Positions 10,688-64,000 of a stretch of DNA of 64,000 nt are shown piece by piece. The position numbers and the translations under genes were made by a program. The stretch's first letter is position 1, and every line of letters starts with the position of its first letter. The notes under the pieces were generated by a model. It saw only the letters and a list, made by a program, of their open reading frames with translations, was not told the origin of the DNA and ran no database searches. The DNA lies in assembly GCA_965113315.1 (NCBI GenBank), contig OZ220366.1. One strand, 5' to 3'. Source of the stretch: Podarcis vaucheri. Lineage: Eukaryota.

Positions 10688-10744
10688 GCTCTACAGCGGG
10701 ATAAGATGGCTGAAGCATACAGCGAAATTGGAAAGAAAGGAGAG
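10688..10744 (+). CDS. CD247: CD3 zeta exon 6: ALQRDKMAEAYSEIGKKGE
   Basis: ccag acceptor, gtaagt donor, 57 nt; DKMAEAYSEIG hallmark; ITAM2 YSAL-x8-YSEI. Confidence 0.98.
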
Positions 10745-11110
10745 GTAAGTGACACTTCGTGCCAATTTGGCTCTACACATAAGGTGCCAAGGTGGCTTCA
10801 GGCACTACTCTGCCTGCTTTTTTCCTACCCTTTATTTAAAGTAGTACTGTCAAGCAAAACAGAAGTTATAGTATCCTCCTCACCCTTTTGATATTGTTTG
10901 AATGACACTTCTGTGCTTTATAATTTTTATTTATTACTGATTAAGGGGCAGTTGAGTCAGATTGTGCAGCACCTTCTTAAAAGACCAATCAGAAGCAAGC
11001 CTCCCACTTCCCCCAGTTAAATTGAGCCACGTGTGAGTGTAATTATTTGCATGGGCAAAAAAGATTTTGGCGGGGAGATTTTGTATTGATGCTGGGCTTC
11101 TTTTTTTCAG

Positions 11111-11146
11111 AGACGACGTGGCAAAGGCAGTGAAACAGTTTATCAG
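11111..11146 (+). CDS. CD247: CD3 zeta exon 7: RRRGKGSETVYQ
   Basis: ttttttttcag acceptor, gtaagg donor, 36 nt, phase 0/0; RRRGKG basic stretch. Confidence 0.97.
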
Positions 11147-11654
11147 GTAAGGCACAGCAATAGCAAGCCTATCTCCCTACAAACTTCAGGGTCACAATCC
11201 TATGGAAGCAAGCTGCACAAAAGCAGCTCACACAGGAATCTTGTTTGCCTTTGCTAGTTTCTGGCATACATGCACCCTGTCAATTTGGATCACCGTTCTA
11301 CAATGGGAGAACAGAGCAAGTGCCCTGTTCCTCACTTTGAGCCACCTAAGAGAATATTTTTGCTTGCCCAGAGGTGTTAATGCAGTCTGTGAAGGAACAA
11401 GTACAGAGGCGCGTCTGAGGGCAGTATACATCTTTGCTTCCTCCAACAAACAATGGACCAGTCACATTCTTCTCCTAAGCAGGACTTTTGCCTTGCTATG
11501 AGTATCAGCCTGTCACCTTTATTTACTCTGGATAGAAAGCCAGAATTGCTGGGCTTATTTTTAGCAGGGGCATATGGACTTAGTACTTCTGATTAATAAC
11601 TACAGTTATATTGATTTAGTTATAACTTTGAGTCATCTCATCTTTCTTTATCAG

Positions 11655-11723
11655 GGTCTCAGCAAAGCAACGAAGGATACATACGATGTCCTTCAAATGC
11701 AGCCCCTACCACCTCCTTACTAG
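11655..11723 (+). CDS. CD247: CD3 zeta exon 8 coding part: GLSKATKDTYDVLQMQPLPPPY*
   Basis: tttatcag acceptor; completes ITAM3 YQGL-x7-YDVL; TAG at 11721-11723. Confidence 0.97.
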   Translation, partial: GLSKATKDTYDVLQMQPLPPPY

Positions 11724-12280
11724 CTACAGTTGAGTCTAGCAAGAGGAGAACTATTTCCATGGCGAGCGGGAATCTTGATTACCATTCTCAAGATGATCTG
11801 TTCAGAAATCTGTTGCCTTCTACAACAAATGCCACTTTTACATGAGCATAAAAACCAAAGCTCCTTTTTAAAACTAATTTCAAGTTGTAGCTTTCAAAGT
11901 GTACATAGCTATAGAGCTTGGGCACCATGTTGTTGCTCAGTTAAAATTTAAGACCAGCTGCTGCGATGGCTATTTCAAAGTCATTTTCTTTTCTGGAGAA
12001 AGATGTTTTTTGAAGCTAAATGTGCATTAAAAAATATTGCTCATGTGGAAGGATTTCGTTCCAAAACATCAGATAATTCTGAGCACCAACAGGTTAACTG
12101 CCCCCCGCCCTCTTGTTATAGGTTTGGGTTTTTATTTATAAATAGCAACTGGGGTTTGGGGGAGGAGATATACAGTGTATCACCATTGCCCCGAAGGACC
12201 TTTTTAAACACTCTTTTGCCAAGATACAAAAACATGCACCACCACTGACCTTGGACTGAGTGCAGTAGGGCATTCTTTGG

Positions 12281-12286
12281 AATAAA
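12281..12286 (+). terminator. CD247: Candidate proximal poly(A) signal of CD247
   Basis: First AATAAA seen after the stop codon, ~560 nt downstream. Confidence 0.45.
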
Positions 12287-12817
12287 CATGCACTGCTAAA
12301 GGGATTTAATATGAAAATTGACTTCTGCTGCATGAGAAGTATACAGACAGTATGTTCCCATAGTTAAGAGAATAGAAGTAGGTTCTTCTTCCACAGGACA
12401 TATGGTTGGTTGAAATGAGTAATACATTACCTCCTGTTTTAAATGTAGATGCTTCAAATTCCTGTTAAGACAGAATCCTGATCAAACTTGTCAGGTGCTG
12501 CTGTCCTGGTTAAGTGAGCTTAATACCATTATGCTTTTTTCCCAGGCAAATGCCTATTGTGAGAATTTTATACCTTGAATCTATTTCCCTTACCTAGTTT
12601 CACAGAGGATTTTTATTCCTTCTGCCCATCTTATCAGACTAGTTGATCCAAAAAGGGTTCACATACATCTCTATCGGCAAAATGGAAGTGAGAGTCTGCT
12701 TATCAGAACTCATACTGGACTAAGGCTGCATACACCCACTTCCCAAACTCAGGGGCTGTAGTTTATCCCTTACAGAGCAATTCCCAGCACCCTTAAACTA
12801 CAGATCCTAGAATTCTT

Positions 12818-13338
12818 GGGCTGGATTTAGGTTTGATGAGGCCCTTTGTATATGCTATATGGTAATTTATGGACCTAATAGGTATCTAAAGCCATTTGCA
12901 CATAACAAAATATGTATTTTATCAAAGTAATTGTTAAACATCTTCTCAATTGTATTTCAGTTCATCTTATATATTGGAAATATACATCCAGTTTTTTCCT
13001 TTAATTTTTTTGGAAGCCTCCAAGAGAGTAGGGCCCCAAGCTATATAGCTCTTTTTAGGTTATACAGTGGTGCCCCGCAAGACGAATGCCTCACAAGATG
13101 AAAAACTCGCTAGACGAAAGGGTTTTTCAGTTTTGCGTTGCTTTGCTAGATGAATTTCCCTATGGGCTTGCTTTGCAAGACGAAAACGTCTTGTGCTTTT
13201 TTTTTTTTGAAGCAGCTTGAAGAGGCGCAGTTGCGATGGACCGTGCTTCGCAAGACGAAAAGCATCGCAAGACGAAAAGACTCGTGGAACGAATTCTTTT
13301 CGTCTTGCGAGGCACCACTGTATGTAAATCTGGCACTG
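12818..13338. mobile_element. hAT-like MITE (middle element of the nest)
   Basis: gggctggattta ... taaatctggcactg inverted ends; interrupts the outer element. Confidence 0.6.
13065..13320. mobile_element. Tc1/mariner (Tigger/pogo-like) MITE (inner element of the nest)
   Basis: TIRs cagtggtgccccgcaagacgaa / ttcgtcttgcgaggcaccactg with TA on both sides; internal cgcaagacgaa repeats. Confidence 0.9.
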
Positions 13339-13493
13339 GGCAGAGGTGGTTAAATGTATGGGGTGTGCACAGCCTAAATCTGATCTTTCAAAAATACACT
13401 TCTGGAGCTTTAAATCTATAAATTAAGTTGAAAAGAACAAAGAAAATGCTTTTCTATCTAAAGAACTGAAACCATGTGTTCTGTGTATTTTTA

Positions 13494-13499
13494 AATAAA
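13494..13499 (+). terminator. CD247: Candidate distal poly(A) signal of CD247
   Basis: AATAAA with upstream tgta and a pyrimidine/U-rich downstream tract; further AATAAA at 13761 and 13806. Confidence 0.5.
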
Positions 13500-14195
13500 A
13501 GCTTCTTAAATATACCTGCTTTTCCCTCTTCTGGTCTTATTCTGCATTCGTTTGAACTTCATAGTGCCATGTTGCAGTGGAAAGTAAAAGGGGAAAAAGA
13601 GCTTAATGAAAAGGAGCAATAAGTCCTACAAAACCTTAAGATTTAAAGATAAACAAGGGTCCACAGATCTCACATCACTGACTTTTAGGACAGTTTAGAA
13701 GGGCAGCAATATCTATTGTAGGACCAAACAAGTAGTATGCATGACACATGCGCCTGTAGCAATAAACAAATTATCTTGTCAAGGACACAAATGTAGAGAA
13801 TACTAAATAAATGTGCATTACGATGTTGAGCTAGTTAGACAACCTGCACATGGTGGTTACTTAACTGAAAGAATTTAACACATCCTGTTCAACATGGAAG
13901 CCGTAAGTTACTAGTAGTGTAAGCTTTTAAAATGAATCTGGCATATTTATTTTCTGCAGAATAACAGAACTGAGTGGCTTACCTGTTTCTGCTGTCCAAT
14001 TATGTGAGTCTTCTAACCTGAGATGTCTTGTAATTTGTAGTTGGGAGAAAATAAGGAGGAACATCCTTCAGCTCCGGATTGTCAGGTTTAAAACAACAGA
14101 AATACAAGGTTCTGCCATTTCTTTTCAGCCATTTCCTTTCACTTGTTCAAAAACCACAAACCAGTGCATGCATGTTAAAACACTTGGAAAAATGG

Positions 14196-14201
14196 TTTAA
14201 T
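14196..14201 (-). terminator. POU2F1: Candidate distal poly(A) signal (ATTAAA) of POU2F1
   Basis: tttaat on + strand; on the - strand it is preceded by several UGUA motifs and followed by GU-rich ggtttgtggtttttg. Confidence 0.6.
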
Positions 14202-15591
14202 GATGTTTACAACAGAAATGAACTGTACAGTTACAGTAAGTTTTATATATATAAAAATTACAGCAGACAAATGCATCTACACAAAATCTACCATTTTCAT
14301 CCTGATTCACTATAATCTACACAGTCTCTCTCAATGCCCACAGCCACCTGTAGGCAGCCACTAGGGAAAAATAGAAGGTATATTTAAAGAGACAGCATCC
14401 TTTTCATCTCCATTTTGGAGACACACACAGTTTCAAATTAGGGCCTTACAGTTCTCAAATTTAAAGTTAGGCAAGAATGCATTGTATCTTAATATATTTA
14501 TCACAGTTAGATACAAAGTGTTCATGTAAATTAAGCTGTACAATTGACCACATTAGCAGGCCTGAGGAAGATATAAGCCAACTTGATGGTTGACGACAGG
14601 GAAGCTCTGTAATCAACGCAAATCTCTCTTTTTTGCCATAGGAAGAGCTCAGGATTTTATAAATCAATTTCCACAAACCATAGCTTTCTTGGCAAGATGC
14701 CTCCCCCCCCACTATAAAAACAAAAAGCATAAATTCCTAGCATAGTAATATCCGTGCTTTTAGTTGTTCAATTGCTATACTTTGAGTCTTGCCTCACCTT
14801 TCAAAATTAAAGGACGATGTTTTCAGGGAACTGGACCTTTATGGGAGGGCAAAAGTACAATCTCACTGTTATAAGCATGCTGTCTCTTTAAAAAAAAAAA
14901 GGAATAAAGATCCCCCTGTTGGGAATGGCAATCAGAGAAAATGCAATCTAAATCGACAATCTGGTGGAAATCACAGATTATGTACACTTTTTCTCAATTA
15001 TGAACACCTAGGCAGTGAAAACTGTTGTGTTAATACATACATTGACACACCCAAAACATACAAAAATACTATTATTTCAAACTACTAAGAATAAGACAAT
15101 TCAGTTATCTCCATGCTATGACTTTAAGAGCATTACACTGAAACAAACAAGAATTTAAACGACATTTTTAATATCCCAGAAATATACCAAAATATACATC
15201 TAAGCTTTGGAATTACTGAGGTTAGACTAATGCAAGTGCTGGGTAATTGTACTTAATACACAAGTCTAAGGTTCTGCAGGAACGAAATTATCTTTGGTAT
15301 CTGCATCAGGCTAATATTATTAACATTTGGATTTTGCTTTGGGATAGAGCTTGTATGACCCTAGAACCAAACACCCCCTAATCAACTGAGATTTAAAAGA
15401 TCCATGTAAAAAGTTCCTTCATTGGCAACCCCCCCTCCCCCAAAGTTTAAAAAGTCATAGGCATCTACCTACCTAGCACAAAAGGTTGAGAAATACAATG
15501 CATAGTTGCACAGTGGTGCTGCAAAAATAATTAAAAGAACAAAAAAGAAGCGGGGGGGGGGAGAGAAAGAAAAACAAAACTTTTTTTTCAG

Positions 15592-15882
15592 AGATTTTGC
15601 ACAACAGGACAGCCTCCTCCAAGCAGTGGCGGGGGGGGGGGAGAGCTCAGAAGTGCACCTCAGCGTGTATTAATATCACCCAGCTCCCAAAGGGTTAAAA
15701 GCACCCACCAGAGCCGCCAGTCATGCACCAATGTCTTCAGCTTCACAACCAATCTGTGGAGTCCATCACTTTCCCCCACTGAACTCTCCCTCCCAATGGC
15801 TGTGCGCCTTTGGATTTGTGGAGGTCAAACAGAACTTGGTCTCCCAAGCAAGCTAGCACAGGATGGGACCGAGCCATCGTAG
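15592..15882 (+). CDS. CD247: Putative CD3-eta-like alternative terminal exon of CD247, antisense within the POU2F1 3' UTR
   Basis: Acceptor ttttttttcag|15592 opens a 96-codon phase-0 frame containing KSTHQSRQSCTNVFSFTTNLWSP; acceptor acaacag|15608 reads DSLLQAV. Both resemble parts of the mouse eta tail as recalled (DSHFQAV...ESTQQSSQSCASVFSIPTLWSP). Expression is not shown by the sequence. Confidence 0.5.
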   Translation, partial: RFCTTGQPPPSSGGGGGELRSAPQRVLISPSSQRVKSTHQSRQSCTNVFSFTTNLWSPSLSPTELSLPMAVRLWICGGQTELGLPSKLAQDGTEPS

Positions 15883-17839
15883 AGATATGATTGGTGCTGA
15901 AGACGCCCCTTTTGTCTTTGGTTTGTTTGTTTGTCTGTTTTGAGTTTATACAATCATTAGGAAATCTTTGGTTTTGGCTGGAAATTTCTAAAAGAACAAA
16001 ACAAAACAAAGAAACCGCCCCCCTTGGCATATAGCAGTGCACCGTGACCTGGAAAAGCTTCTCTTTCCAAAGGGTGGGGAAACTACATTCAAAGTAAAAT
16101 GGCAGAAGGGACAGGGATGCAGCTTCTGGTTAGCCTAGAGGCGGGGACGGGGAGGAACAAGATTGTCAAATAATAAACGAAGGAAATTAAATATGGGAGG
16201 AGCATGAGAGAAACAAAATCAAAAAGTAGCGAGCAATATGCATGCAGCACTTGGCTGCGAGGAGCTGTCAGGGTCCTGCCTTGACCCTGCAGTACATTAT
16301 AGCCCTGACATCTCACCAGGGGGGAGGGAGAAGGCAGCATGGAGGTTTCATGCACGGATTGGGAGTGGAGATGGATATTCACAGACTACGAGAGGACCCC
16401 TGGTAACCAAAAGAAATAGAAGATTGCAATTTGCCCTCAGTTTGCAGTAGCTTTTAAGCAGCGACATTCAGAGGCTTTAAGGGGTCGCCCCCCAGGTTGC
16501 AGGTCACAGGATGCTATAAGCCAGAGTTCCACGTTAATCAAGGGAGGGAGGGCAGTCTTGGCAACTCTGTAGGGTTTGGAGAAAGTTAAAGCAAGTTACT
16601 CAGTTATGAGTTAGAAATGAGGTATACGACAGCTCCCGTACCTGTGGCGGATAAACACCCAACACTTACTCACACCTAGCCTTAGACACTACCACAGAAG
16701 AAGGAAATGGAACAGCGACACGGTGGGACCAGGGGAGCGCAAGCAAAACGGCCGGAGTCCCGTGATGCTCTCAAATGCACTTGCACCTGACCTCTTATCT
16801 CCTGGATTTTAGAGAAAAGCCTATATCTTCCCTCCAGGGAGGTTCAAATAAATGGAAGTGACTTACCAATCAGTATATGGGTATCTGCTGTGGCTTCTTC
16901 CTCAAATTCAAATACAGAAACTGGATCGAAAATGCCAATGTGCTAACATGGATTAGATGGGACAAGTGACAGTTTCCCCCCAGCCCTGACAAAAGGTGTT
17001 TGTTCCAAGGCTGTTGGCCAGGCTGGCTGGCTTGTATTGTGCAGATATTAATTTGACACAGATCTGTACTCCTTAATATTTACCACTATTCCTGTGGTAC
17101 TCTTGCCAGAAACATTCACCATTTACCCTTATAGCCCCCTGGTGGGTTAAAGACATTTCTGCTAGAAATACTTCAGGAAGGCTTTTGTTTTGATGGGTTC
17201 TACATTGTAAAAACAGAGAATTTTTGGTGAGAACAAAGATCAGAGTTTTAGAAATGTTTGGGGAAAGAGCCAACAACAAACTATTAAACCCATATTTTCG
17301 CCTGAGTGAGGTAAAGAGAAATAAGGCAGAAGAGGGGAGACATTCCAACCTTCCTCATAGTACTAAGGATCTTCCTCTCATGATCCCATCTCCCAACTGG
17401 TTGTTTCATTTCCTTCCTCAGATTTGTTTTCTTTTAAAGCACACCTTGTTTTCCACATCTTTTGTTCCAAGTGCTCTTATCTTTGAGAGGTCATTTTCCA
17501 TTTCCCTATTACCTACTTATAAATCTACCTAGCTCTTAGAAAAGTCACACAATATTAATACCACTTTACATAATGTCAGAACAATAAGTCTATTAGTAAA
17601 GCTTTCCAGGGAAGTTCTGCAACCCAGCTGATTTCCAGAGGAAGAATAGCTGGACAACTAATATATATTTACCTTCTCCCTTGCTTCCCACGTGAACATG
17701 TCAGGCTTGACTGATGCAATTCATCAAGCCAACAGCATGTAATGTGACAATGCCCAAAGCTATTCCGGGGAGGAAAGAAAGACGTCTCCAAGGTTTTCCA
17801 CTATGAAAACCCACAGGACTTCTGAAATGATGTGAAACA

Positions 17840-17889
17840 GAGGACAATGCAGTTTTGATATTTAGGAGGACAATGCAGTTTTGATATTT
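17840..17889. repeat. Tandem duplication of a 24-nt unit
   Basis: gaggacaatgcagttttgatattt at 17840-17863 and 17866-17889. Confidence 0.9.
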
Positions 17890-20800
17890 TAAGAATAAAA
17901 CCAAGTTTTCCCTACGTCCAACAGTTGCTTGTGATCTTGGGTGTTGAACTTGCCTCCAGTATGTCCTCAGAAAAAGTATCCAAACCAACCCTGTGCATTA
18001 AGAAGGTAGGAAAACCAACACATGAGGAGATCCTCCAAGTCAAGAGTCATCAAATCAAACCTCTAAGACCACACAATCTTTTGCCGAAGACATCCTGAAA
18101 ACAGCAGAGCTGCCAAAAACTAAGCAGTATACCTTTGGTTCCTATCAAAACATTGGAAATTCTCCCCCTCCAGCTGAAGCTCAGGTTTTCCTTTCCCACC
18201 GCCGGAAATATACTTCCTCACACAAACACACACTCTGTATTCTTCTGCAATCAGAGAAAGGAGATGCTTCAGAGTCAGGATGGAAGCAGATGAAGTCTCC
18301 CAAGAATGCCATCCAAAATCTGAACCATGTCCTGTGAAAGAAAAATGACTCAACCTTCCAGAAAAAGAAACCCACATCCAATATTGCCTCTTTTCTCCTG
18401 AAGTCTGCCTCACAGAATCTTATCCCTTTCAGGTACTCTATACTTAGGTACTAGGAGCAGGGTAGCATTTAGTTTGGTTTCTCTTCTGCTATTTTTGGTC
18501 TAGACAGGATTAGCATTGCTATTAGAAAATTAAATTAATTACCACATACTACATTCAATAACAAGACAAGCAGGGATAAAAAGAACTGTTTCACTTTGTT
18601 CTCCCAAATATCCTCCTCCTTTTCCAAATGTAAAAGTCTTGGCCCAGCTGCAGCCCTAGTGCAACTACGTGGACTAAAATGGGTTGCTAATTCATCTCCT
18701 TGTATGCCCCCTCCAAGCACACAAACTTGCTCAATATTTACATCCCCACCAAGGCCCTTGGTTTGCCAATAGAAAGAAAGCAGGGAGGCAGAGGTCATGC
18801 ACACCTAGAAGGACCCTGGAAGCAATACAGCAACTCAGTTATGTCTGCTGTTATGTAGCGTGTTGACAACGATAGCCAATGACAAAGTAGAAAAAGACGT
18901 TGCAAGCAACATTTGCCTTCTAGCACAGCTAACTCTCTCTCCTTCCCGCCCCCACCCCATACCCTATAAAGTTGTAGCCTAAATACAGAACTGCGAATAC
19001 ATACAGCATAAGTCAGGGTCTTCAAAACTAAACTCTACAGCTAGAATTACTTCCATTATTTATAAAGTTTCTCTCCCGATTTTCCATTCTGCAAATGATA
19101 CTAAAGCTATGCTGAGGTATTTTTTTTATAAAAAAAAGGTGCCAGAAAGCCAGCTGCTACCAAAAAGCATTGTTCCTACAACCCTGTAACAATGCCTGCT
19201 TACTGAAAGAGAGACAAGAAGGGGTGGAAGGAGACTCCTAAGTTATGTCAGAGGAGAAGCCTTCATTTTGCTCCTTAGGGTCAAAAACATTTGGCATGCT
19301 TCATGCCAACATTCAGCCCAACTACATGTATACCGCATGTTTGGACAAAGGTCAGTAAAGGTCATAGCAGTAAAGCAATGTCAGGCAGTGTGACTACGAC
19401 CTTTCTTTCTCTCGAGAATAAAGCTAATTTAATTCCAGTGTGACTCAAGAGTCACTTCACACACTGTAATTTGCCTTCACAGAGAATGTCTATGCATAAA
19501 ATAGCAACAGGCACTGCACATTATGATGCAATTTCCTAAAAGGATGCTATATCTGTATGTAGGAAAGTGAAATGTGTGGAACAGACCTCTTATCATCCTG
19601 CATATTATCCCAGGAGGATTAAAGACTACTGTGATCTGTTGATAGTGAGGCTGAACTCAACATTGCAAAACCGATTCAGAAATGTATTAGGGATAGGCTG
19701 CGGCAACTAATCAATGCTAGGTCCAATATATCTCAAGTTTTCTTTCACAATCTATATAGATGTCTGTATTAAGAATTTTAAACTTTTGAAAGTCTCCCTA
19801 GAAAAGTGGAAATGAAATATAGGTTTCATTTTTCCATTGACTATTAATCAAATGCCTTTTGATTAAATTTGTGTAATCTGAAAATGTTTTGGGCACACAG
19901 GAAAAAGGCAGAGCGGACTGGCATGACTGGGCATCTGTCCAAGGCCCTCTGCTGCCAAGAGTCTCCTTGTTCTGCTCCAGTGATAAGGGAGATTTGCTGA
20001 GGGAGGAACCCATGGAAGATCTCCTGCTCAAGGGCCCTTCCAAACATGAAGCCAACACTGGGGAGGGTGAATGTTTACAAATTGGACAGTACACCATCCC
20101 ACAACACTCACAAAAGTAAGAAGACTCTGGGTAAATTGGCACTAGTTCCAGGTGCATTCCTTTTTTTCTGAAGCTGTTCATACAGGGCACGGACTTTGGC
20201 ATCAAAGTCCATTCAAGAAGCTCAGGGATCTCAGCCAACTTTTATCACTTAAGCCAATAGAAAAGCTCCCTACTGGCAAGTTCGACTTGGCCTAATAACT
20301 GCATGGAGCAAGAACTTTGCAAGTGAATGTCTTAAAAGAGTGTATTGCTTAAAAAAACATTAGATTGTAACTTTGTAAAAAAATTGGCTAACGAGTCCTG
20401 AGAAGTTTTGGTTAGAGATGAATAACCATAATCAGCCAGCCAGATTCTCCTTTGGTAGTGTTTTCTCTATAATGGGTTATACCTATATACATTTATGAAC
20501 CTCTAGAACCCTTTTAGAATTCATCTTCTAAAAAGTGCATGTAGGCACATACAGATCGAGCATAAACAGACTCCTAATGTCAGAGAGAAAGGATTACATG
20601 TTCAAAGCAGAAGAGAGACTTCTACGTGGGATGTTGTTTTTTTAAAAAGGTCATTAACAGCACGAATATGATGAAATGATGTATCTGCCTAAATGTGCAC
20701 TTCCATTACAAGAAATTATGTTACTGAAAAATATAGGCATCGAAAAGATATTGTTAAATAATTCTACCTAACAAAAGTGTCGTCTGAAAGGTTAATAAAG

Positions 20801-21064
20801 GAACTTTTATGGTAAATATAGCTGCTACACTTGTGTGGCTCCAAAAGCAACAAGGCCATAGCAAAAGCTTTAATTATACCAAACACTAATCAAGTCAGTT
20901 AGTGGATTTTGCATCCTTGTGATGCTAACTGCCCCTGCAGCTCAAACCCCAAGCATAACTGTATGGCCCCACAGTGGAACCAGTGCAAGATTACATTTAA
21001 ATTGGGGAAAATGTTCATAAAGCAAGACTTGAGTGATATTTTCCCACATCTTATCACTTACAAA

Positions 21065-21087
21065 AATGAATGAATGAATGAATGAAT
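21065..21087. repeat. (AATG)n microsatellite
   Basis: Directly visible. Confidence 0.9.
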
Positions 21088-22614
21088 CTATGTGTTATCT
21101 GTTCAGTGCTCACACTTCCTATGTAATATTTGATGCAAATATTTTCGTTTTGAATGTGGTCTCACAAAGTTCCTACCAGATCCTGAACATAAATAAATGC
21201 CCCCATGCAAAAACCACGTGAACCCTCCACCTCAGGTGCCAAACACTGCACCAGAGCCAGTCTTTGCTTAGGCTGCAGTGTAGCCCAACATCCAGTAACT
21301 GAAATAAGCCATCAGTGTGGTAGCAAATAAAATACAGGCTTTATCTTGTAATGGGCAGCCTACATTCTTCAAGGTTTTTAGAACAGCAATTAGAAAGACA
21401 GTTAAAGCATGATATTACCAACCTAACCCCACGTAATATACAACTGAAATAGGGAAGGGAAGGAGATAAGGCAACAATGGACTCTTAAGCCTGGTTTCTG
21501 GCACCGGAAATTCAGCAATAAGTACTTCTGTTCTTCCTTTATAACTTCAATCAATAATATCTTTGGTTGAACTTATCCAGTAAAAATGCCTTAGATGACA
21601 ATCAACATAAAACTAAACTTAACCTATCAGGTATTTTCCTTGGCAATTGAAGCTTAGGAGTTATTTTTAAAATATAGCATGGATTCACCATTCACAACTG
21701 CTTTTCCATCACAGGACACCCAGGCGACCCATTTTTATAACATCACGTTTGTAGCTTTTCCTAGCCGTGTTTATACACAGGCTCAGGCATCAGGGTTCTG
21801 GTAACTCACATAAATATGTCATTGTAAAGCAACTTTGTAATGTTTCTGAGCAGGTACAGACTTAGTGCAGAGCAGGTTGTAGGACTGCAATTCCCCTACC
21901 CTCTTTCTGTCAGCCTTAAACACGGTTAATGTCTGTGCTGGCACTCACCTGAGCCATGGTTAACATGAACGCAGGGATCCTGCAGCCCACCTTCCTTAGT
22001 CAGGGTTAAGATATTGGGAGTATTACATCTGATCCAACTCTATACATCAGGGGAAGTGACATTAAATGATCACTGTCCATTCACATTCACGTGGCATGCA
22101 TATTTAGGTGGCAGGTGGGAAAAACAGCAAAAACTTTTCAGATCCTCCCTTTTATGAGAAATTGTCTCCATCTCATTTCTGTCATATGTTGTAATCCACT
22201 GCACTGCTACTCCTGAATGCCCTGGGTTAATGACAATTCCTACATTAGGCATGCTTGCTTATCTCCAAGGTAAACTAATTCATGGCCCAGACATCTTACT
22301 GCCGGTGCTACTGGGGCAGCATGCAGGAAGAGTGAACAGTTGGGCTGATCTCTGCTGCTCTGGCACTACAAATGGTCATAATAAGGTGACCCAAAGAGCC
22401 AATAAGACTCCACCCTTCTTTATATAACCGTTGTCTCAGCCTTTGCTCTTCAGTCTTAGCAATCTATCACTCAAGTGAAGGTTGAGATGCTAGACTGCCT
22501 GGAAGACTTGCTTGGACCTGCAGAATTATTGGTTAACCTCCCATCCACCAACCCTGACACAGATATATGGAGCAGTTATACATTCTCAAGATGGCAAAAT
22601 AATGTAGAGATATA

Positions 22615-22733
22615 GGGTGGTACTCAACTAATTTTTATGCAGAGTAGACGCACTGAAATTAAGGACAACGACTACATTAGGTCCATTAATTTCAATGGGC
22701 CTACTCTGGGTAAAGCATAGTTGAGTATCACAC
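22615..22733. mobile_element. Old palindromic MITE
   Basis: gtggtactcaacta...agagtagacgcactgaaattaa pairs with ttaatttcaatgggcctactct...tagttgagtatcac. Confidence 0.6.
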
Positions 22734-23824
22734 ATAGTTTACATTTATAACACTTCATAAGCACAAACCTTACAAAGGAAGCGGTCTATTATATCTACAC
22801 ACACTGCAAAGTAAGGGCACATTCAGACATTACTCGTACGTGTGAGCCTCATACATGGGAATGTGTAATGTGCAAATTGGTATATATGGGCAGATTCAAA
22901 AAGGTGTGGAAGAACAACTTTACTTTGAAATTATGAACCTTGCGAGTTTGTCCATCAGTATGATAAGCCATGTATTCAGCTGGAAGAACAACTCTCCTAC
23001 AACAGAAAGTGTCCACACTGGCCCTAAGTGCACACAACTTAGGGTAAATTGAATAGATGTTTTAACTCATCTGTCAATGGTTTGTCTGCTCAATATATCC
23101 CCATTTTTCACACCTTTCAAGGAAGTAGTATTTGCACCCAATAAGGTTCTGGCACTCTGGCTTCTCTAAAATCAATAGAAACATTCCAACTCATCTGAAA
23201 GGGACACGGACTGAACTCTGCCATTTTCGTAAGTAACCTGCAACTGTGGAAACTGCAGGTATGCGGATTAACCTACTGATTTCCTTTTTGGTAATAAAAG
23301 GTGTACTGAAATCTCTCAAGTTTGCAAGCAAACGTTTCAGACTTTGGCCTATGAAACAGATCTGAAACTGTGTGAAATGAAATGACAGCCTAATAACCCA
23401 TGACTGAAAAAATGAAAATAAAATCAACAATCTCTAGAACACTGGAATGCTGGAGTAATTTGTTCAACTAATGCAGTAATGGAAGAATGGTTAGTACTGG
23501 ATATTAGGGACACAGGTATCACACATTGTTTTGGATTACAGGAATTGCACTTGGTAGTGACCAGAAAATTTTCACTATACCAGAACGTTCATGACTTTTG
23601 TGATTATCCTTGTAGCTTTGTGGTAAGAGAAATGTATTATAACTGTGAGGTTCCAGGGCAGATTCTCCAATTATCTGGATCTGATTTTCTGTTGAAGTGT
23701 GTATTGCAGAAGCTGATTATCTATCTATCTCTCTAGAATAGCCTTTCTTCCAGAACAGCTAGGACCCATGGGAATGGTACTCTGGAGGGCACCAGCTTGG
23801 GGCTGGCCGCTCTAGAATGGGAAG

Positions 23825-23826
<2 letters not shown>

Positions 23827-23866
<40 letters not shown>
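23827..23866. repeat. (GT)20 microsatellite
   Basis: Directly visible. Confidence 0.97.
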
Positions 23867-23868
<2 letters not shown>

Positions 23869-26547
23869 ATATGGCCATGTGAAATATATAGCCAAGATCA
23901 ACACAAAATAGTGACAGCTATTCAGATCCTGGTATCTCTGTGCTGCTGCGAACAAGCATCAATGCATTAGGTATGAGCGATATGAGGAATGGAATATGTA
24001 AAGTAGGATGAATACAATTCAACCAAAGCATTTTAGCTGCATGTTTTTAGCTTCCAGTTTCTTTCACCAGAACCTGCTGTGAAACCTGCTAGTAGTGTGG
24101 CAGTGGCGTGAATCTAAGAGAAATAAAGATTAAAGGTGCTCACACCAACAATATGTGAATACTGTGAATACTACAGCAAGATTTTTATGGCCATCATCTG
24201 AGCTACATTAGTGTTCCAGATTCATCATGTCCTCTAACTGCAAACAGTGAACCCAAGAAGAGGCAGCCAGTCAACTGAATAAACAGCTTCCCTTAATCCT
24301 TGAGAGTTTTGGGGCGATTTACAGGGCTGTGTTCTCTTTATTTTTTGTACATAAATATGAAGGGCTTATTTCCTCCTTGATGTTTGAAATTCATAGCTAA
24401 ATAAATGCCACAGTTCAGAAGTCATCACCATCTCCTCTATTAAAATATATACGTATGGATGTGTGCACGCCAAAAAACACAAGTTACATAGATCTAATTT
24501 CAATGGACGAAAAAAAATCAAAAAAAAATCCATGGGATTGATATTTCCTTTGGTAGAAACTAGTCAACACTATGGCCTTGAGACCAACATAGTGGGTACC
24601 TGTCTCTCCTCTGCCATCCTTTCATACATTTGACTGCTCCAAGCTGTTGCTATGGGCCACTTAAAACCTTAACACACAGTATTATTAATAGCCCTATATT
24701 TTTAAACTGAGACTGAAATCATGGAGACAGTCACACCACAGTATATAGATTGAGCCAAACTGCTAAGGAGGATGTGGGAACAGTTGAATTAGTAACCATC
24801 TGCCATTGCCATTCTATTTACACACCAAACCATGGAAATTAGATAATAATCAAGTTGAGATTTTGTCTGCCCCAAGGATATATAAAAGACCACCCCACCC
24901 CCCAAAAAAGATTAAAACAAGCAGCAATTTTTATATAAAATAAAAAATGAAAAGAAATTGTCAGTAGCATCTATCACCTCTCTGCATCTGAACTGCACTT
25001 ATACAAACTAGTCCATTAGTACAGCAGCTTGCTAGAAATTGACTTTGGTTCAAGCTTAGTTTTAAAAAAATAAAACATTAAAAAAAAATCAAACACACAT
25101 AAGACGGTGGACGGACATTTGCTCACTTCCCTGCTTACAGTTCACAAGTTTTTAAAGTTTTAGGAAGAATTCATTATTTTTAAATAGCTTGTGAAACAGG
25201 AAGTTGGAAATTCAGAGACGAACAGAGAGCAAACAGCATGACGGTATGCGAGAAGAGACAAAGATTTCTGCTAGTTGAGCATTAATGCCAGCTCTCTGAA
25301 TTGGGATCAGCAGCCAGAGAAGGAATTGAGAATAAAGTTACTGCCATCATGATATCAGGTGATAAAGGATATCAGGTGATGAGAGGTTAAATAATTACCT
25401 TTGGCATGAAATGCAATATAATTACATGAGTGCTAGAACTCCCCTTCTCCCCAGGCTTAGTGAAAAGAAAAACTGGGCAGCTCCTCCTTCTTGAAGATAT
25501 TTTTCAATTCACCTTAAAAAGAGATTGGAGAGTTCCAAGTACATTGCAGTCATCCAATCTCTTCTCAGCAGAAAAATTTAGATTCAGACCAGCATAACAT
25601 TTAAATTCATCTTTGTCTCCTCAGTCTCTCTCTCATCCATTTGTCAGCAGCTGTTTGCGCATACCACTTGTTACGTTGCTTGGAAACATTTCCCCCTCTC
25701 TAGTAGAGGTGTTTATTACTGCCATAAATGATCTAGCTAGCAGCAGCATCACCCAGAAATAGCATGAAATATTGCAAGACGCATGCAACATGCCAGTGTT
25801 CACCAGAAAGACAACACTCTCCACGGCACACTGGTCAGCTTTCTGAGAATTCCTTACCAACTTTTTCCAGAGCAGTGAACAGTGTCAAAGAACATTACAA
25901 ACTATTTAGAATGGAGCACGCTCTGCTGTGTTGGCATAAAACAGGACTTGTTCACATGACCTAGTTTACTTCTGGAATAGAAATGTTTTAAGTTGAAAAC
26001 ATTTTCAGTACAATCATATTGGAGACACTGGAAAAAGTAAGTTCTTAGAGATGAACCAAGGCAGCGTTCAGAAATCCTATGCCAAACAGCTGGTAGGAAG
26101 GTTCAACAAATGCATATGAATTATCACCAATACAGGCAGCCTCCTGAGAAAGTAAATAACAGAAATATTCCCAGTTGTAAAGTGGCCATTTCCATGCAAT
26201 TATGAGACAAGACAGTGGCCAGCACAGATGCTGAAGACAGAACCTATGGGCCAAATCCTTCCTCCCTTGGCATCAACAGGAGCCAAAGACGTGCAAATGA
26301 GAGCTAGATTTGGCCCAAGTGTGCTGAGCAAACAGCTGTCCAATCAGAGCGCCCATCTCACAAGCATGGACTATCTTTGCACATTACCCTCTGTATGTTC
26401 ACTTAGCCGCCAACACTTCTGAGAGAATCCCGAAAAACATACCGCCAGGGAAAAGGAAACTAAAGAACATTCGCAATTCACATGCTTTCCTCTCTTTGCT
26501 CCTCCCTCTGTGTGGCATGGGAGCTCACTGAAACTGTTCCAGGAGCA

Positions 26548-26687
26548 NNNNNNNNNNNNNNNNNNNNNNNNNNNNNNNNNNNNNNNNNNNNNNNNNNNNN
26601 NNNNNNNNNNNNNNNNNNNNNNNNNNNNNNNNNNNNNNNNNNNNNNNNNNNNNNNNNNNNNNNNNNNNNNNNNNNNNNNNNNNNNNN
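26548..26687. other. Assembly gap (140 N)
   Basis: Run of n characters. Confidence 1.
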
Positions 26688-27120
26688 TAAACACCTTGTA
26701 TGACATTATGGCCTGTACAACAGACCAATAAATGATAATTAAAAAAAGATATTTAGATCAAAAAGAAAGAAGAAATCCCATTCCTACGTTTGAGTTGATA
26801 ACCCACCTTAACTTGTCATTGATACTGCTGGAAATGATAAGTAGTCCTTTTTTGTTTTATACATTTTTGGTTAGAAAGTTCTCCAGTCAATGAAGCAATC
26901 CTGAAAAGACAGTGTTTATTATAAAATTAGGCAAATGTTTGTCCCAGTTTTAAATCCTTCTTCTTGGTTTTTTTTTTCCTTTTGTATTTTTCCTTCTCTC
27001 CCTTGTCCCCAGCAACACGGTGAGAGGAAACCAATCACATTTTGCAGTTTGTAAACCCAGCTGGCAGCCCATCTCACTGCAGAGTAAAATAGGCTATGGG
27101 TAAGCACAGCTCAGTCCAAC

Positions 27121-27431
27121 TCACTGCGCCTTGGAGGCAGTAGTAGTGGTGGAGGCAGCCCCGCTGGCCGAGGCCACGGTGAAGAGAGAGTTCTGGATAG
27201 ACTCTGCTGAGGTGGAGGTGGCATGAAGGCTGGCAACTGGTCCAGAGGCCCCTGCGGAGGCTGCAGCTGCAGAGACCAAGCTAACTGGGTTGCTGGTGAG
27301 CAGTGAAAGGTTCTGAGGGTTCAGGAACAGAGGGGCAGTGACGATGTTCGGCGTACCTCCAGCATTGGCAAATACCAAGTTCCCAGTTGCATCCAGTGAT
27401 GTTATTGGAAGAGAGCCACCAGATGCAAGAG
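27121..27431 (-). CDS. POU2F1: Oct-1 terminal exon 16 coding part: (A)[25 protein letters not shown]...TTTTASKAQ*
   Basis: ctctctag acceptor, 311 nt, TGA at 27123-27121; Oct-1 C-terminus ASKAQ. Confidence 0.98.
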
Positions 27432-27693
27432 CTAGAGAGGGGCAGAAGAAAATGTCAGCATTCGCAGCCCCACACATCAGCAGCACTGAAGTTTTTCTTC
27501 TGACTACCAACGGATGCTAACACACACACACACACACTCCAAAAATAGTAAACGAAGCCATCTCAACATCAGGAGGAAAAGCTGGATTGGATTCAGAGTG
27601 ACTGAGGATTGAGAACTGACCATTTTATTATCCAGATAAATACACCATTTTCACCACAGAGGAAAAAGCAGGTGCTGTGAAGACCCATTAAGG

Positions 27694-28086
27694 CAGGGAT
27701 GGAGAACCCATGGCCCAAACGGCCCAGGGCCCAAATGCAGTTCTTGGGGCCTTTCTACGTGTCCCTTGGGGCTCTCTCCCCTGGCCACATCCTGTCCCTG
27801 TGCCATGCCCCTCCCCACAGGCTCCACCCCTCCCCAGCCCGGCTCCACACCCTTTTCGAGTGCTTTTGCCTAGCTGAAATTCATCCTTCAACTGCAAACA
27901 TGCCTGGTTGCAGAGATGCGATGGCTAAGTGTGTGCACCTACTGAAACCTTTGAACTTTCCACACTCTGCACAAAGGCAAAAGTCCCATCCATTGTTATG
28001 CCCACTGTTATGCCAGTGGCATGTGGGCCTCACAAGGCTCCTTGAGGGGATGAGGCCCCGGGGCTGAAAAACTTCCCCAACCCCTG
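27694..28086. mobile_element. hAT-like MITE
   Basis: cagggatggagaac ... cttccccaacccctg termini, GC-rich body with ggccc repeats; target duplication only partial. Confidence 0.65.
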
Positions 28087-37499: not shown

Positions 37500-40341
37500 C
37501 TATGTATAAGTATTTATATGATAATGCTAGAAGACAAGCTAAGTTAGATGACAGAATAGATACAGTGGGTATAATGGAAACTTGGTGGAATGGAGAGTGC
37601 CAGTGGGACATGATGATCTCTGGACACAGACTCTATACATGGTCTAGAACTGAGGCTGCTCTGTTTAACAGAGAGAACACAAGTCCAACAAGCTAGAAAC
37701 CCCAAAAGGGGCAGGTTCCTTCACAGAAATGGGGGGGGGGGCATTATACAGCTCCCAAAAGTAATTTAGCACTGAGGATCCCCCGGACCAAAATGCCCAG
37801 GGTAATATTAAAATAAAGGATTAAATCAATGAGGCATCCAAATGAGAAAATGCCACAGTAATGGGAAATTTCAGTAACCCACGCATATAATGGACTACAT
37901 GCATTTTCTAGTAATAAAAAAGAAATAAAATTTCTAGATATCCTAAATGACTGTTTCCTAACAGGTGGTCATTGTACCAACTAGAGGGGTGGCAACCCTA
38001 GACTTAGAACTTAAGCAAAACTCAGGACCAGGTGGAAGATGTGTTAAGCAGATTGGAAACAATTGCCGCAGTGCTATCAAATTCAACATATATTTAAATT
38101 GCCAAGAAAAATCCAACACAGTCACATTTTATTTCAAAGGAGGAAACTTTGCCAAAATAAGGTGATTGGTAAAATGGAAGCTGAAAGTCAAGAGGGACAA
38201 GTCTCTCCAGAATCCCCAGGGTTGTTCAAAGCCACAATAATAGAAGCCTAGCTAGAATATATTCCACAGATCTGGAAAGGTACCACCAGGGTCATTAAGA
38301 TGCTGGTGTGGTAAAGAGCAGAGTCAAGGAAGCTATCAGGGGCAGGAAGGATTCCCTCAGAAAATGGAAGTCTAGTCCAAAAGAAAGGCAGACAGACCAA
38401 TAAATAATAAACCAATGAAACCAATAAATGATAAAAACAAGGATTGACAAAAATTATTTAATTACATTCAAAGCAGGTGACTGCATAGGGAGGTAGTCAG
38501 GCCTTTGGATGACAAAAGAGCCAAATATGTGCTAAACAAGTAAAAGGAGATTGCAGAGGAGCTGAATCAATTATTTGTCTTCACTGTGCAAGATGTAGGG
38601 AAGACACCTGTGCCTGAATAAACTTGCATGGAGGTTTTTTTTAAAAGAAGAAGAAGTGAGGCAAATGGTGGTGACAAGTTCTAGGTCTTTTTCACAAATT
38701 AGAAACTGAAAAATCATCTGGTCCAGATGGCACCCAAGAGTTTTGAAATGTGAAATTGCTGAACTTATAACAAAAACATGAAAACTGTTAATTAACCTCC
38801 ATACCTGAGGACTCGGCAGTGGATTTTTAAAAAAGGATCTGGGGTGGGGTTGGGGTTCCTGGGAAACTGCAGGTCAATTATCTTAACATCTGTTCCACAA
38901 AAACTGGTGGAAAGAATTGTTATGCCTTGCTGAAGCAGAACCAGAAGAGTTTCTGCAAGGGCAAGTCCTGTGTTATTACAGTTCTCTCTTTGAGTATCAA
39001 CAAGCATATAGGAAGAGGTGATCCAGTTGACATGCTGTCTTACTACCTTAAAAGTTGACTTAATAATTTCAAAAAGCTGCAGGTAAGTATCCAGTTGACA
39101 TGCTGTCTTACTACCTCCAGTTGACATGCTGTCTTACTACCCAAGACTCCTGAATAAACTTAGCAATCATGGAGTAAGAGAAGTCCTCTTATGGATCAGG
39201 AATTAGTTAAGAAACAGAAAGCAGAGTAGGAATAAATGGACAGTTCTCCCAATGCAAGGATGAAGAAAGTGAAGGCCAACAAGGATTGAGGCCTTTGCTT
39301 TTTACTTTTTAATGACCTGGAGTTAGGGGTGAACAGTGAGGTAGCCAAGTTTGCTGATGATACCAAATTGCTGAGCTCCAAAAGGATCTCTACAAACTGG
39401 GTGAAAGAGCAGTAAAACGGCAAATGCAATTTATTGTAAGCAAGTGTAAAATGATGCACATTGGGGCAAATTTTTACCCCTCATTTAACATATAGGCTAA
39501 TGGGGTCTGAAATGGCAGTGACTGACCAGGAATGAGACCTTGAGGTTGTAGAGGGTAACTCGATGAAGATGTTGACCCGACCCAGTGTGCGGCAGCTGTG
39601 AAAGAGGCGAATTTCATGTTAGGGATCATCACGAAAGGGACTGAAAATTTAACTGCCAATATCACAATGCTGTTATAACAAATATATGGGGAGACTACAC
39701 TTGGAATACTGTGTACAGTTTCTGGTCACCTCCCCTCAAAAAGGATACTGCACAGCTGGGACAAAAAATTCAGAAAAGAGGGAACTAAAGTGATCATGGG
39801 GTTGGAGTAACTCCCCTGAGGAAACATAAAGGGATTTTAAGTTTAGGGGGGAAAGATGAGTGGTGGGAGTGGGGACGTGAGAGCGGTGCATAAGATTAGG
39901 TGTGTCATGGAAAAAGTGGCAGGCAGAAAACTCTCCCTATTATATAGTACTAGAACTCAGGGGAAGTCAATGAAGCTGAATGTTGGAAGATTCAGGACAA
40001 AAGAAAGTACTTCTTCGCATAGCGCATAGTTTAAACTATGGTATTCGCTCCCACAAACGTAGTGATGGCCACCAACTTGGATGGCTTTAAAAGAGGATTA
40101 GACAAATTCATGGAGGATCAGGCTATCAATGGTGTCTAGCCACGATGGCTATGTTCTAACTCTACGGTTGGAGGCAGTATGCCTCTGAATATCAGTTGCT
40201 GGGAATCGCAGGAAGGGAGAGTGCTGTTGCACTCAGGTCCTGCGTAGGGGCTTCCCATAGGGATCTTGTTGGCCACTGTAAGAACAGGATGCTAGATTAG
40301 ATGAGTCTTTGGCTTGATCCAGAAGAACTCTTCTTATGTTC
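37500..40341 (+). mobile_element. CR1 LINE, long degenerate ORF2 (endonuclease to RT) and 3' end
   Basis: IDTVGIMETWWN endonuclease motif, VAKFADDTKL RT motif near 39340, CR1-type tail ending cttcttatgttc; many stops and frameshifts. Confidence 0.9.

Positions 40342-52564: not shown

Positions 52565-52598
<34 letters not shown>
52565..52598. repeat. (AC)n microsatellite
   Basis: Directly visible. Confidence 0.96.
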
Positions 52599-61652: not shown

Positions 61653-64000
61653 CTGCATTAGAAGCAACAGAAAATATGGTTTTAAAAATCCTACTCACAC
61701 CGTCCTCTTTACAGCACAAAACAGGACATTTTATATTGGTGAACAGGGGGCACTATAAACTGACCAAACTCAACTGATGGGTATGGACCCTGAAATATCA
61801 AAAGGAAATTAGGACACAGCAATGTATCACTGTAAGATACTATATATTGGATATAGTCAAAAAGCTAATTGAAAAAGGCATACTTGAGGTGCTTCATAAA
61901 AACAGACCAATTATGTTTGCTACATTTAGAAAAAAATAGTGTCCAAACCTGAAGGATTGTATTAAAATTTCATTTGGATTATTATCATAATTTTTGTCTG
62001 AATTCTTATAAAATTTCCCAAAGTTCTGCTTAGACCTCTGATCTGCCTCTCCTCACCCACCCTTTAGGTGTTTCCAGTGGTGCTGCTAGATCCTTTTCTA
62101 AACAGTACACAGGCATGTTGCCATGAGACTTCCATGCTACCACTATGTGATTACATGACTATGCTAAACTGAATATGATGGTGCATGATGGTGTTCAGGG
62201 TATATATAATTCATTGTATCAGACCAGGAACAACAGCATGGTGATGTCACTGTGCAATGGCAATACTACGGCAATGTAATAGCAATAAACTCTTTACAAG
62301 ACGTAGTTCTGGCAAAAGGAGAGACGCAACTTATCTGTTAAGACTTCTGAAACAGGATTTAAAAATGGAGGCTGGGGGATGAAAGGCTGCTGATAATAAG
62401 CGGCAAAAATAATCTAAACCACTGAAAACAATTTTGACAGGTCCTAGTCCTATCATTCACTGTGCTTTTCGTTATAGTCGTATCAAACTCCTTTTGAAAC
62501 TAAACTGATGCTTGTTAGTATGGTACTGAAAAAAAGCCATTGCTGATGCCAACAGATTTATTCTCATTACAGAATACCACCCACTCTTGGTCTTCTCCAA
62601 CTGGGATAAGCCTCTGAGTTTTTAATTACTACAACCCATGTGGACTCTTGTTGAATATTTTGTAAAAATAGGACACAAAACGTTCAACTAATTTTCTCCC
62701 TTGGAACACTGTAATTAATTTTTGTAAAATTCAATTTTTGTTGTAAAAGTTACCTTTTCGGGGGGGGGGGGTGTTTCATGAAAAGCACCACCTTCCTTTC
62801 TTTTGCAGCTATTTTCTGTGCCTGTTCACAACCATTGTTCACCTGACCTCTTGCTGAGTGATTTGGGGGTGGGGTTAAGCATGAAAAAGAGGGCACCACA
62901 GTTGTGAAAGCTGCCATCACACTGATATACACATCCTGTTGAAAGTAATGCAGAGGAATAACCACTGTATTTGGATGCTCACTTGGATTGTGACTCAGTT
63001 TATGTGGATTTTTTCACATCATGAATTTTCACAAAGGTAATGGCTCCCAGTTTTGGTGCACTAGTTAACTATTCACATCAAAAAGGATGACAAATCTCAC
63101 AACACACAACCTTAAACTGGTTTGAACATTCTCCCAGACTTTTCTAAAAGGCTACTGAAGAAACTAGAGTTAAATAGTAGTTAGTTATAGAAAAAATCTA
63201 TTTAAGTTGCCATACTAAAAGAACAGCCATCAATAGAAACAAGGAGACGGGGTACTACATTAGAATTACAGCAAATATTCACTAGCAAGGCTGGCAGATC
63301 CAAAACTACAAAGGTGGTGAGACAGATGAATACATATATTGTGGCAGATGGCAACAGATCATGGGAATGAGCAAACCAATATGCCAAAAATAGAATAAAA
63401 TTGTGAGCAACGACCAGATCCAGAGAAGACTGGACTATAAGAGAAAAGCGAAAGAAGAGGAAAGAAAGTTAAGCACCAGAAACCTGACTAAATTAATATA
63501 GTCAAAATAATTTGTTGCCTTTCCTAAACACACTATAGCCATAATCCAGGCAAGAAAGTACTTCAAATTTTTAGATATTCCCCCATGTAACAAGCAATCT
63601 AGGATTTCTCCAGCTCTGCTCATAATTAGCAATAGCAGAAAGAACCCCCTTCAACATTTCCGATTGTCAGATTTCACCTGTTGAAACTAAATCACTGATG
63701 TTTACAGAAAAGCATTTAACAATGGAATTTGGCAGTGAAGAATACATTATTGCATTCTTTACAATTTAGCTGATGCTAGAGTTAAAACATATGCCAGAGG
63801 TTAGGGTAACAGTATAGATGTGAAAGTATTATTAAGAAGTGCTGCAAAAGAAATCCATTTGTCATATCCTATTTCTTAAAGACATTTGCACCAGTCAAGC
63901 CTCAGAAACAGTAGGCAGGTAGGAAAGATTACTTCAGCAGCTACTGCTCCACCAACAATGCAGAATCTTTTCCTGTTGCATCATGCATGCAGTTATTTGC

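What the first reader, a model, noticed from the sequence alone, without database searches (positions are those of the whole stretch)
15592..15882. A CD3-eta-like alternative last exon for lizard CD247, hidden antisense in the Oct-1 3' UTR
Seen: 4.4 kb after the phase-0 donor of CD247 exon 7 there is an acceptor ttttttttcag|AGA at 15592. It opens 96 stop-free codons: RFCTTGQPPPSSGGGGGELRSAPQRVLISPSSQRVKSTHQSRQSCTNVFSFTTNLWSPSLSPTELSLPMAVRLWICGGQTELGLPSKLAQDGTEPS*. A + strand AATAAA follows at 16172 and another at 16847. The ORF track does not list this frame. Known: in mouse, CD3-eta is made by splicing exon 7 to exon 9 instead of exon 8, loses ITAM3, and exon 9 lies antisense in the long Oct-1 3' UTR. 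The mouse tail as I recall it contains ESTQQSSQSCASVFSIPTLWSP, which aligns with KSTHQSRQSCTNVFSFTTNLWSP here. Inference: the eta exon sequence and a usable acceptor date back to the amniote ancestor, and lizards may make a two-ITAM zeta isoform. I know of no description of this in reptiles.
Basis: partly seen in the sequence, partly recalled or inferred. Interest (0 to 1): 0.9.

Follow-up and report, generated by a model that had tools for sequence, protein, structure and literature searches.

The report
Eta-like open frame in Oct-1 UTR
The open reading frame downstream of lizard CD247 is really there, but it sits in DNA conserved across vertebrates without a stable reading frame, so it is most likely the far end of the Oct-1 (POU2F1) 3' UTR read backwards; whether lizard T cells ever splice to it could not be tested.

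Summary
These are the exon 7 phase-0 donor at 11146, ttttttttcag|AGA at 15592, 96 stop-free codons to a TAG at 15880-15882, and AATAAA at 16172 and 16847.

The open frame alone is not beyond chance. Each strand of the window has 28 stop-free stretches of 96 codons or more.

The stretch 15565-16194 matches ten ORF products called on unidentified contigs in public assemblies. These products follow the lizard DNA in order, but each needs 3-8 frame changes. That is conservation of nucleotides, not of a protein.

All of them that reach this point are 1 nt shorter than the lizard at about 15695-15699. This extra base is what brings the 15592 frame into register with the mouse-like "STQQSSQSC..VFS" block.

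From my memory of mouse eta, the AG matching the mouse acceptor is the second one, at 15608. Its frame stops after 21 codons.

Best reading: this is the POU2F1 3' UTR seen antisense, the explanation already given for the mouse eta exon. The open frame is an accident.

Low-level eta-type splicing in lizards therefore stays open.

The scan had noted only this same stretch before.

The parts
11111..11146 (+). CD247 exon 7 (RRRGKGSETVYQ). It has a phase-0 donor, CAG|gtaagg.
   Evidence: read directly from the sequence
11655..11723 (+). Coding part of CD247 exon 8. It carries the second half of ITAM3 (YDVL) and the stop TAG.
   Evidence: PDB CD3 zeta chains, residues 144-163, E 3e-5
12281..12286 (+). 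First AATAAA after the CD247 stop. It is the likely zeta poly(A) signal. Transcripts would have to read through it to reach the eta-like frame.
15533..15591 (+). Sequence just upstream of the first acceptor. There is a T8 tract directly before the CAG. Before that lie about 45 nt of almost pure purine, including a G10 run at 15552-15561. No T occurs from about 15534 to 15580, which makes a poor branch-point context. On the - strand this is a long pyrimidine tract.
15592..15882 (+). The reported open frame: 96 codons plus TAG. It is reached from the first AG (15590-15591) in phase 0.
15608..15673 (+). Frame reached from the second AG (15606-15607): DSLLQAVAGGGESSEVHLSVY, then TAA at 15671-15673. 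The antisense peptide PRHCLEEAVLL is identical in foreign product P0013, so this AG and its first codons are deeply conserved. From memory, this start matches the start of mouse eta (DSHFQAV).
   Evidence: the mouse comparison is recollection only
15631..15641 (+). G11 homopolymer inside the open frame. Its length modulo 3 agrees with P0013, where the run is interrupted.
15695..15699 (+). The lizard is 1 nt longer here (GGG-TTAAA-AGC) than every sampled foreign sequence that reaches this point. This base joins the 15592 frame to the mouse-like block.
   Evidence: frame change at 15699 for P0011 and P0007; by eye for P0013; the stop of P0006, P0008, P0009 and P0012 fits a sequence 1 nt shorter
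15565..15804 (-). Conserved blocks B and C of the presumed POU2F1 3' UTR. They cover most of the open frame. Block B is the antisense of the STHQSRQSCTNVFSFTTNLWSP stretch.
15884..16194 (-). Conserved block A, just past the stop of the open frame. Its core peptide SSQNQRFPNDCINSKQTN (about 15926-15985) is identical in all ten foreign products.
16172..16177 (+). + strand AATAAA 290 nt after the stop of the open frame. A second one lies at 16847.
13946..13951 (-). Candidate - strand AATAAA for the end of a long POU2F1 3' UTR. Another lies at 12612-12617. Either would put the open frame inside the UTR.
   Evidence: no RNA support obtained
27121..27432 (-). Last coding exon of POU2F1, with its stop at 27121-27123. 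The 5' limit is approximate.
   Evidence: Pfam POU2F1_C, E 3.7e-32

Best explanation
The 291-nt open frame lies inside at least 630 nt (15565-16194) of deeply conserved non-coding DNA.

This DNA is most likely the distal 3' UTR of POU2F1 (Oct-1), which is transcribed from the - strand, tail to tail with CD247.

The resemblance to the mouse CD3-eta tail comes from shared ancestry of that UTR DNA. In the lizard a 1-nt length difference happens to put it in frame with an upstream AG.

The frame itself is accidental and is not a conserved coding exon.

Shown here: the positions of the features, the conservation, and the frame changes between organisms.

Inferred: that the conserved stretch is POU2F1 UTR, and that the open frame is not translated.
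For: - **Gene order.** The order and strands of CD247 and POU2F1 are as in mammals.
- **Foreign matches.** The - strand ORF window:15746-16042 found eight ORF products from Logan and JGI assemblies. Their clusters hold two longer members.
- **Frame changes.** tblastn places single products in two or three lizard frames one after another. P0005 matches frames 0, 2 and 1 at E 5e-6, 1e-10 and 3e-15. P0011 matches frames 1, 0 and 2. A frameshift-aware alignment needs 3-8 frame changes per product over 16194 to 15565. Inside the ORF span they fall at about 15699, 15731/15737, 15768-15772 and 15876-15881.
- **No matching protein.** No protein in 1.84 billion representatives matches the open frame, apart from spurious tandem-repeat products. 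Of three word-sharing candidates in the length-limited search, none scored E <= 10. The Atlas recognition value is low, 1251 against 2300.
- **Chance level.** The open frame plus acceptor is within chance.
- **Features unusual for a constrained exon.** There is a G11 run inside the frame. The roughly 45 nt before the T8 tract contain no T, so a branch point is hard to place.
Against: - No RNA data were seen, so neither the strand nor the extent of transcription here is known.
- The source organisms of the foreign products are unknown. Their DNA could not be fetched, so indel positions are inferred from protein-to-DNA alignment.
- The T8-CAG is a reasonable pyrimidine tract plus AG. The second AG is deeply conserved. 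Eta-type splicing is reported in mouse and swine (PMC8416054).
- Lack of frame conservation does not rule out a lineage-specific tail.
- Some frame changes could be assembly errors in single Logan contigs.
Confidence: 0.65

Rival explanations
1. It is a real alternative last exon. Some CD247 transcripts read past the zeta poly(A) site, and exon 7 is spliced to 15592 (96-residue tail) or to 15608 (21-residue tail). Either product lacks the second half of ITAM3, as mouse CD3-eta does.
For: - The donor is phase 0, and a T8-CAG acceptor with an open frame follows.
- AATAAA lies 290 nt downstream.
- The second AG and its first codons are identical in antisense translation in P0013.
- Eta is described in mouse and swine.
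- The position antisense to the Oct-1 region matches mouse.
- Possibly RNA-derived runs hold about a third of the words of 11100-16300.
Against: - No junction evidence was obtained.
- The frame is not kept between organisms.
- The 15592 frame needs a lizard-specific extra base.
- The mouse-like frame stops after 21 codons.
- The branch-point context is poor.
- No annotated or predicted protein carries this tail. Both searches could miss one, however.
Confidence: 0.25
2. The conserved stretch is not POU2F1 UTR. It is another conserved non-coding element, such as an enhancer or a separate non-coding RNA, lying between the two genes.
For: - The conservation is at the nucleotide level.
- The end of the POU2F1 UTR was not mapped. 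Candidate - strand poly(A) signals also exist closer to the stop, at 26915, 25712 and 24337.
Against: - In mouse the eta exon lies opposite Oct-1 transcription (titles).
- Rfam finds no known RNA family in 11000-28000.
- Candidate - strand signals at 13946 and 12612 would include the stretch in the UTR.
Confidence: 0.07
3. The resemblance to mouse eta is pure chance, and the stretch has no counterpart elsewhere.
For: - The mouse fragment is only recalled.
- Open frames of this length are common in the window.
Against: - Ten foreign ORF products match this stretch at E down to 1e-15 in tblastn.
- The recalled fragment aligns at E 3e-7.
Confidence: 0.02

Closest known systems
Mouse CD3-eta (CD247 exon 7 spliced to exon 9), whose exon lies antisense to the Oct-1 (Pou2f1) 3' region (Clayton 1991, Ohno 1994 and Koyasu 1994, as cited)
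   Same: - The gene order and strands are the same.
- A conserved AG lies downstream of exon 8.
- Any splice from exon 7 would drop the second half of ITAM3.
- A block of about 22 residues reads alike (recalled mouse fragment).
   Different: - The lizard frame from the mouse-like AG (15608) stops after 21 codons.
- The long frame starts at another AG, 16 nt upstream. It reads a different frame for its first 35 or so codons.
- No transcript evidence was obtained.
- The mouse sequence could not be obtained from any tool.
Conserved distal 3' UTR of POU2F1 / Oct-1
   Same: - It lies downstream of the POU2F1 stop on the same strand.
- It is conserved as nucleotides, with frame-shifting length differences between organisms.
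- It has long pyrimidine tracts on the sense strand.
   Different: - The extent of the UTR in this lizard was not mapped.
- The source organisms of the compared sequences are unknown.
Porcine TCR eta chain (Yamamoto 2005, cited in PMC8416054)
   Same: It is a second species in which exon 8 is replaced by a downstream exon. Use of this region is therefore not confined to mouse.
   Different: The paper is not held, so the exon position and tail sequence could not be compared.

Membership tests
CD3-eta type alternative last exon of CD247 | Lies downstream of exon 8, on the CD247 strand, opposite the POU2F1 3' region | tested here: met
CD3-eta type alternative last exon of CD247 | An acceptor that gives an open frame with the phase-0 donor of exon 7 | tested here: met
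   This is within chance expectation.
CD3-eta type alternative last exon of CD247 | Sequence orthologous to mouse exon 9 | tested here: inconclusive
   Only a recalled 22-residue fragment could be aligned. The stretch is conserved in other, unidentified organisms. None of these is identifiable as mouse.
CD3-eta type alternative last exon of CD247 | Reading frame kept between species from the acceptor through the tail | tested here: not met
   There are frame changes at about 15699, 15731/15737, 15768-15772 and 15876-15881 against the foreign products. The 15608 frame stops at 15671-15673.
CD3-eta type alternative last exon of CD247 | Exon 7 to alternative exon junction present in T-cell RNA | not testable with these tools
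CD3-eta type alternative last exon of CD247 | The product loses ITAM3 | tested here: met
   The second YxxL of ITAM3 (YDVL) is in exon 8. The loss follows for any exon 7 to downstream splice (inference).
Conserved POU2F1 3' UTR element | Conserved as nucleotides, with no single frame kept | tested here: met
Conserved POU2F1 3' UTR element | Lies between the POU2F1 stop and a - strand poly(A) signal | tested here: inconclusive
   The stop is at 27121. Candidate signals lie at 13946 and 12612, but also at 26915, 25712 and 24337.
Conserved POU2F1 3' UTR element | Transcribed as part of the POU2F1 mRNA | not testable with these tools
   only shows that possibly RNA-derived runs hold about a third of the words. 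No reads were laid.

The most novel reading that the evidence does not exclude
Eta-type splicing could be as old as the tail-to-tail CD247/POU2F1 arrangement. The conserved AG at 15608, kept because it is part of the Oct-1 UTR, or the AG at 15592, would then be used by lizard T cells. The result would be a zeta isoform with two ITAMs and a lineage-specific tail. The UTR of one gene would thus have repeatedly supplied a signalling-modifying last exon to its neighbour.
Probability: 0.15. Interest if true: 0.55.

Novelty: already known. Interest (0 to 1): 0.25.

Why it matters
If lizards made an eta-like chain, changing ITAM number by alternative splicing would be an ancient amniote feature rather than one seen in only a few mammals. 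It would also be a clear case of one gene's conserved UTR supplying an exon to its neighbour.

As the evidence stands, the finding mainly extends to a squamate what is known from mouse. The eta-exon region looks conserved because it is Oct-1 UTR. An open frame in such DNA is not evidence of a protein.

Tried and rejected
- **Reads.** A local script that listed poly(A) signals printed seven of them as context. The local BLAST left them out.
- **Protein searches with the open frame.** The search of protein representatives returned only spurious tandem-repeat proteins. In the search for homologous proteins, none of three word-sharing candidates scored E <= 10. The - strand stretch 15472-15669 found no candidate. 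These blanks are weak. The first library is clustered at 50% identity. The second tool has length limits that exclude a full-length isoform of about 206-236 residues.
- **Metagenome scan.** The pattern GTCTTCAGCN{6,15}CTGTGGAGTCC gave 8 microbial chance hits with no other similarity to the window.
- **Other database checks.** Rfam found nothing in 11000-28000. Pfam gave only a sub-threshold LAX match (E 0.059). The protein atlas gave no usable hit.
- **Papers.** Clayton 1991, Jin 1990, Ohno 1994 and Koyasu 1994 are not held. No held paper prints the eta tail.
- A genome-contig scan was not run. Any vertebrate contaminant in bacterial assemblies would most likely be human, and I could not have told.
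- **Human origin of the foreign products.** Their source organisms are unknown. They stand on only 1-6 contigs each, so I do not take them for human. I did not look for their contigs.
- **Idea dropped.** I first thought one more or one fewer G in the G11 run would restore a mouse-like frame. P0013 is in frame with the lizard across this run, so the run length is probably right modulo 3.

Full report
**What is in the sequence.** CD247 runs on the + strand.
- Exon 2 (the transmembrane part) is near 2434 and exon 6 is near 10715.
- Exon 7 is 11111-11146. It ends ...TAT CAG|gtaagg, so the donor is in phase 0.
- Exon 8 is 11655-11723. It reads GLSKATKDTYDVLQMQPLPPPY and then a stop. This product matches residues 144-163 of solved CD3 zeta chains.

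POU2F1 runs on the - strand. An ORF ending at 27121 carries the Pfam POU2F1_C domain (E 3.7e-32). The two genes are therefore tail to tail, as in mammals.

At 15581-15591 the + strand reads cttttttttcag. From 15592 there are 96 codons without a stop, up to a TAG at 15880-15882. AATAAA follows at 16172 and 16847.

**Is it more than chance?** Taken alone, no.
- The window has 28 stop-free stretches of at least 96 codons on each strand.
- Between 11724 and 27000 there are 1081 AG sites. Eight of them open 90 codons or more in phase 0.
- 55 of the AG sites have a good pyrimidine tract, so about 0.4 such coincidences are expected. One is seen.

The acceptor is mixed in quality. It has a T8 tract right at the AG. 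Before that come about 45 nt of nearly pure purine, including a G10 run, with no T. This leaves no ordinary branch-point motif. The frame also contains a G11 run at 15631-15641.

**What the stretch is.** The open frame itself found no protein.
- Among 1.84 billion representatives there were only spurious repeat proteins.
- In the length-limited search, none of three word-sharing candidates scored.

The overlapping - strand ORF (window:15746-16042) found eight ORF products called on Logan and JGI contigs. Their clusters hold two longer members, P0012 and P0013. None has a name or a source organism. Each stands on 1-6 contigs, so I do not take them for human. I did not look for their contigs.

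These products are translations of the same DNA in other organisms, presumably vertebrates. They share three blocks with the lizard:
- **Block A (15884-16194).** Its core SSQNQRFPNDCINSKQTN is identical in all ten.
- **Block B (15665-15804).**
- **Block C (15565-15690), through P0013.** PRHCLEEAVLL and LIHAEVHF are identical to the lizard.

The whole open frame therefore lies in old, conserved DNA.

**How it is conserved.** Single foreign products match two or three lizard frames in turn.
- P0005 matches frames 0, 2 and 1 at E 5e-6, 1e-10 and 3e-15.
- P0011 matches frames 1, 0 and 2.
- A frameshift-aware alignment needs 3-8 frame changes per product.

Several of these changes fall inside the ORF span, at about 15699, 15731/15737, 15768-15772 and 15876-15881.

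This is the pattern of a conserved non-coding element, not of a protein. It fits the distal POU2F1 3' UTR. Candidate - strand AATAAA signals at 13946 and 12612 would place the stretch inside that UTR. The end of the UTR was not mapped.

**The frame in detail.** Every sampled foreign sequence that reaches this point is 1 nt shorter than the lizard between GGG (15692-15694) and AGC (15700).
- P0011 and P0007 change frame there.
- P0013 does so by eye: its FNPLGAG matches the other lizard frame.
- The stop codon that ends P0006, P0008, P0009 and P0012 fits a sequence 1 nt shorter.

This extra base lets the frame from 15592 run into the mouse-like block.

The second AG, at 15606-15607, is the one inside the identical PRHCLEEAVLL block. 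Its frame reads DSLLQAV... and stops at 15671-15673 after 21 codons.

From my own memory, which no tool confirmed, mouse eta starts DSHFQAV and continues ...RPKGESTQQSSQSC. If so:
- the mouse acceptor corresponds to 15608, not 15592;
- the mouse frame is broken in the lizard by a stop and by length differences that are not multiples of three.

P0013 is in frame with the lizard across the run, so the G11 length is probably right modulo 3.

**Comparison with what is known.** Reference lists in held papers give the key titles:
- Clayton 1991: eta and zeta are splice products of one locus.
[quoted passage not shown] A 2021 review says eta is seen in mouse and swine (PMC8416054). The originals are not held. 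That the eta exon region is Oct-1 sequence on the other strand is therefore established for mouse. The lizard shows the same arrangement.

**What could not be done.**
- No junction reads, no strand information and no foreign DNA were therefore available. Indel positions rest on protein-to-DNA alignment. The parsimony DNA leans towards the lizard.
- The run search shows only that possibly RNA-derived runs of related species hold about a third of the words of 11100-16300.
- The joined model of exon 7 plus the open frame was not built or searched.

**Verdict.** The best reading, at about 0.65, is conserved POU2F1 3' UTR seen antisense, with an accidental open frame. A real but minor eta-type splice in lizards remains possible, at about 0.25. 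It would give either a 96-residue or a 21-residue tail. Nothing here supports a conserved eta protein.

Noticed in passing
window 15926-15985 (- strand): About 60 nt whose - strand translation SSQNQRFPNDCINSKQTN is identical in the lizard and in all ten foreign ORF products. It looks like an ultraconserved element of the presumed POU2F1 3' UTR.
   Followed up: partly
window 15533-15591 (- strand sense): A long pyrimidine tract on the POU2F1 strand, including a C10 run and an A8/T8 run. A similar short motif recurs at 15982-16006 (direct repeat D2).
   Followed up: no
window 26548-26687: A run of 140 N about 430 nt downstream of the POU2F1 stop codon. It was left as it is.
   Followed up: no
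window 23827-23866, 27520-27537, 52565-52598: Dinucleotide (GT/AC) microsatellites. The second lies just upstream of the last POU2F1 coding exon.
   Followed up: no
window 37731-37741 and 62760-62771: Further G11 and G12 homopolymer runs in POU2F1 introns. Long G runs seem common in this window.
   Followed up: no
   Followed up: no
window 15674-15855 (+ strand, frame of 15608): A second + strand frame stays open for about 60 codons alongside the reported one. Two of the three + frames are therefore open across block B, which again fits chance openness in this DNA.
   Followed up: partly
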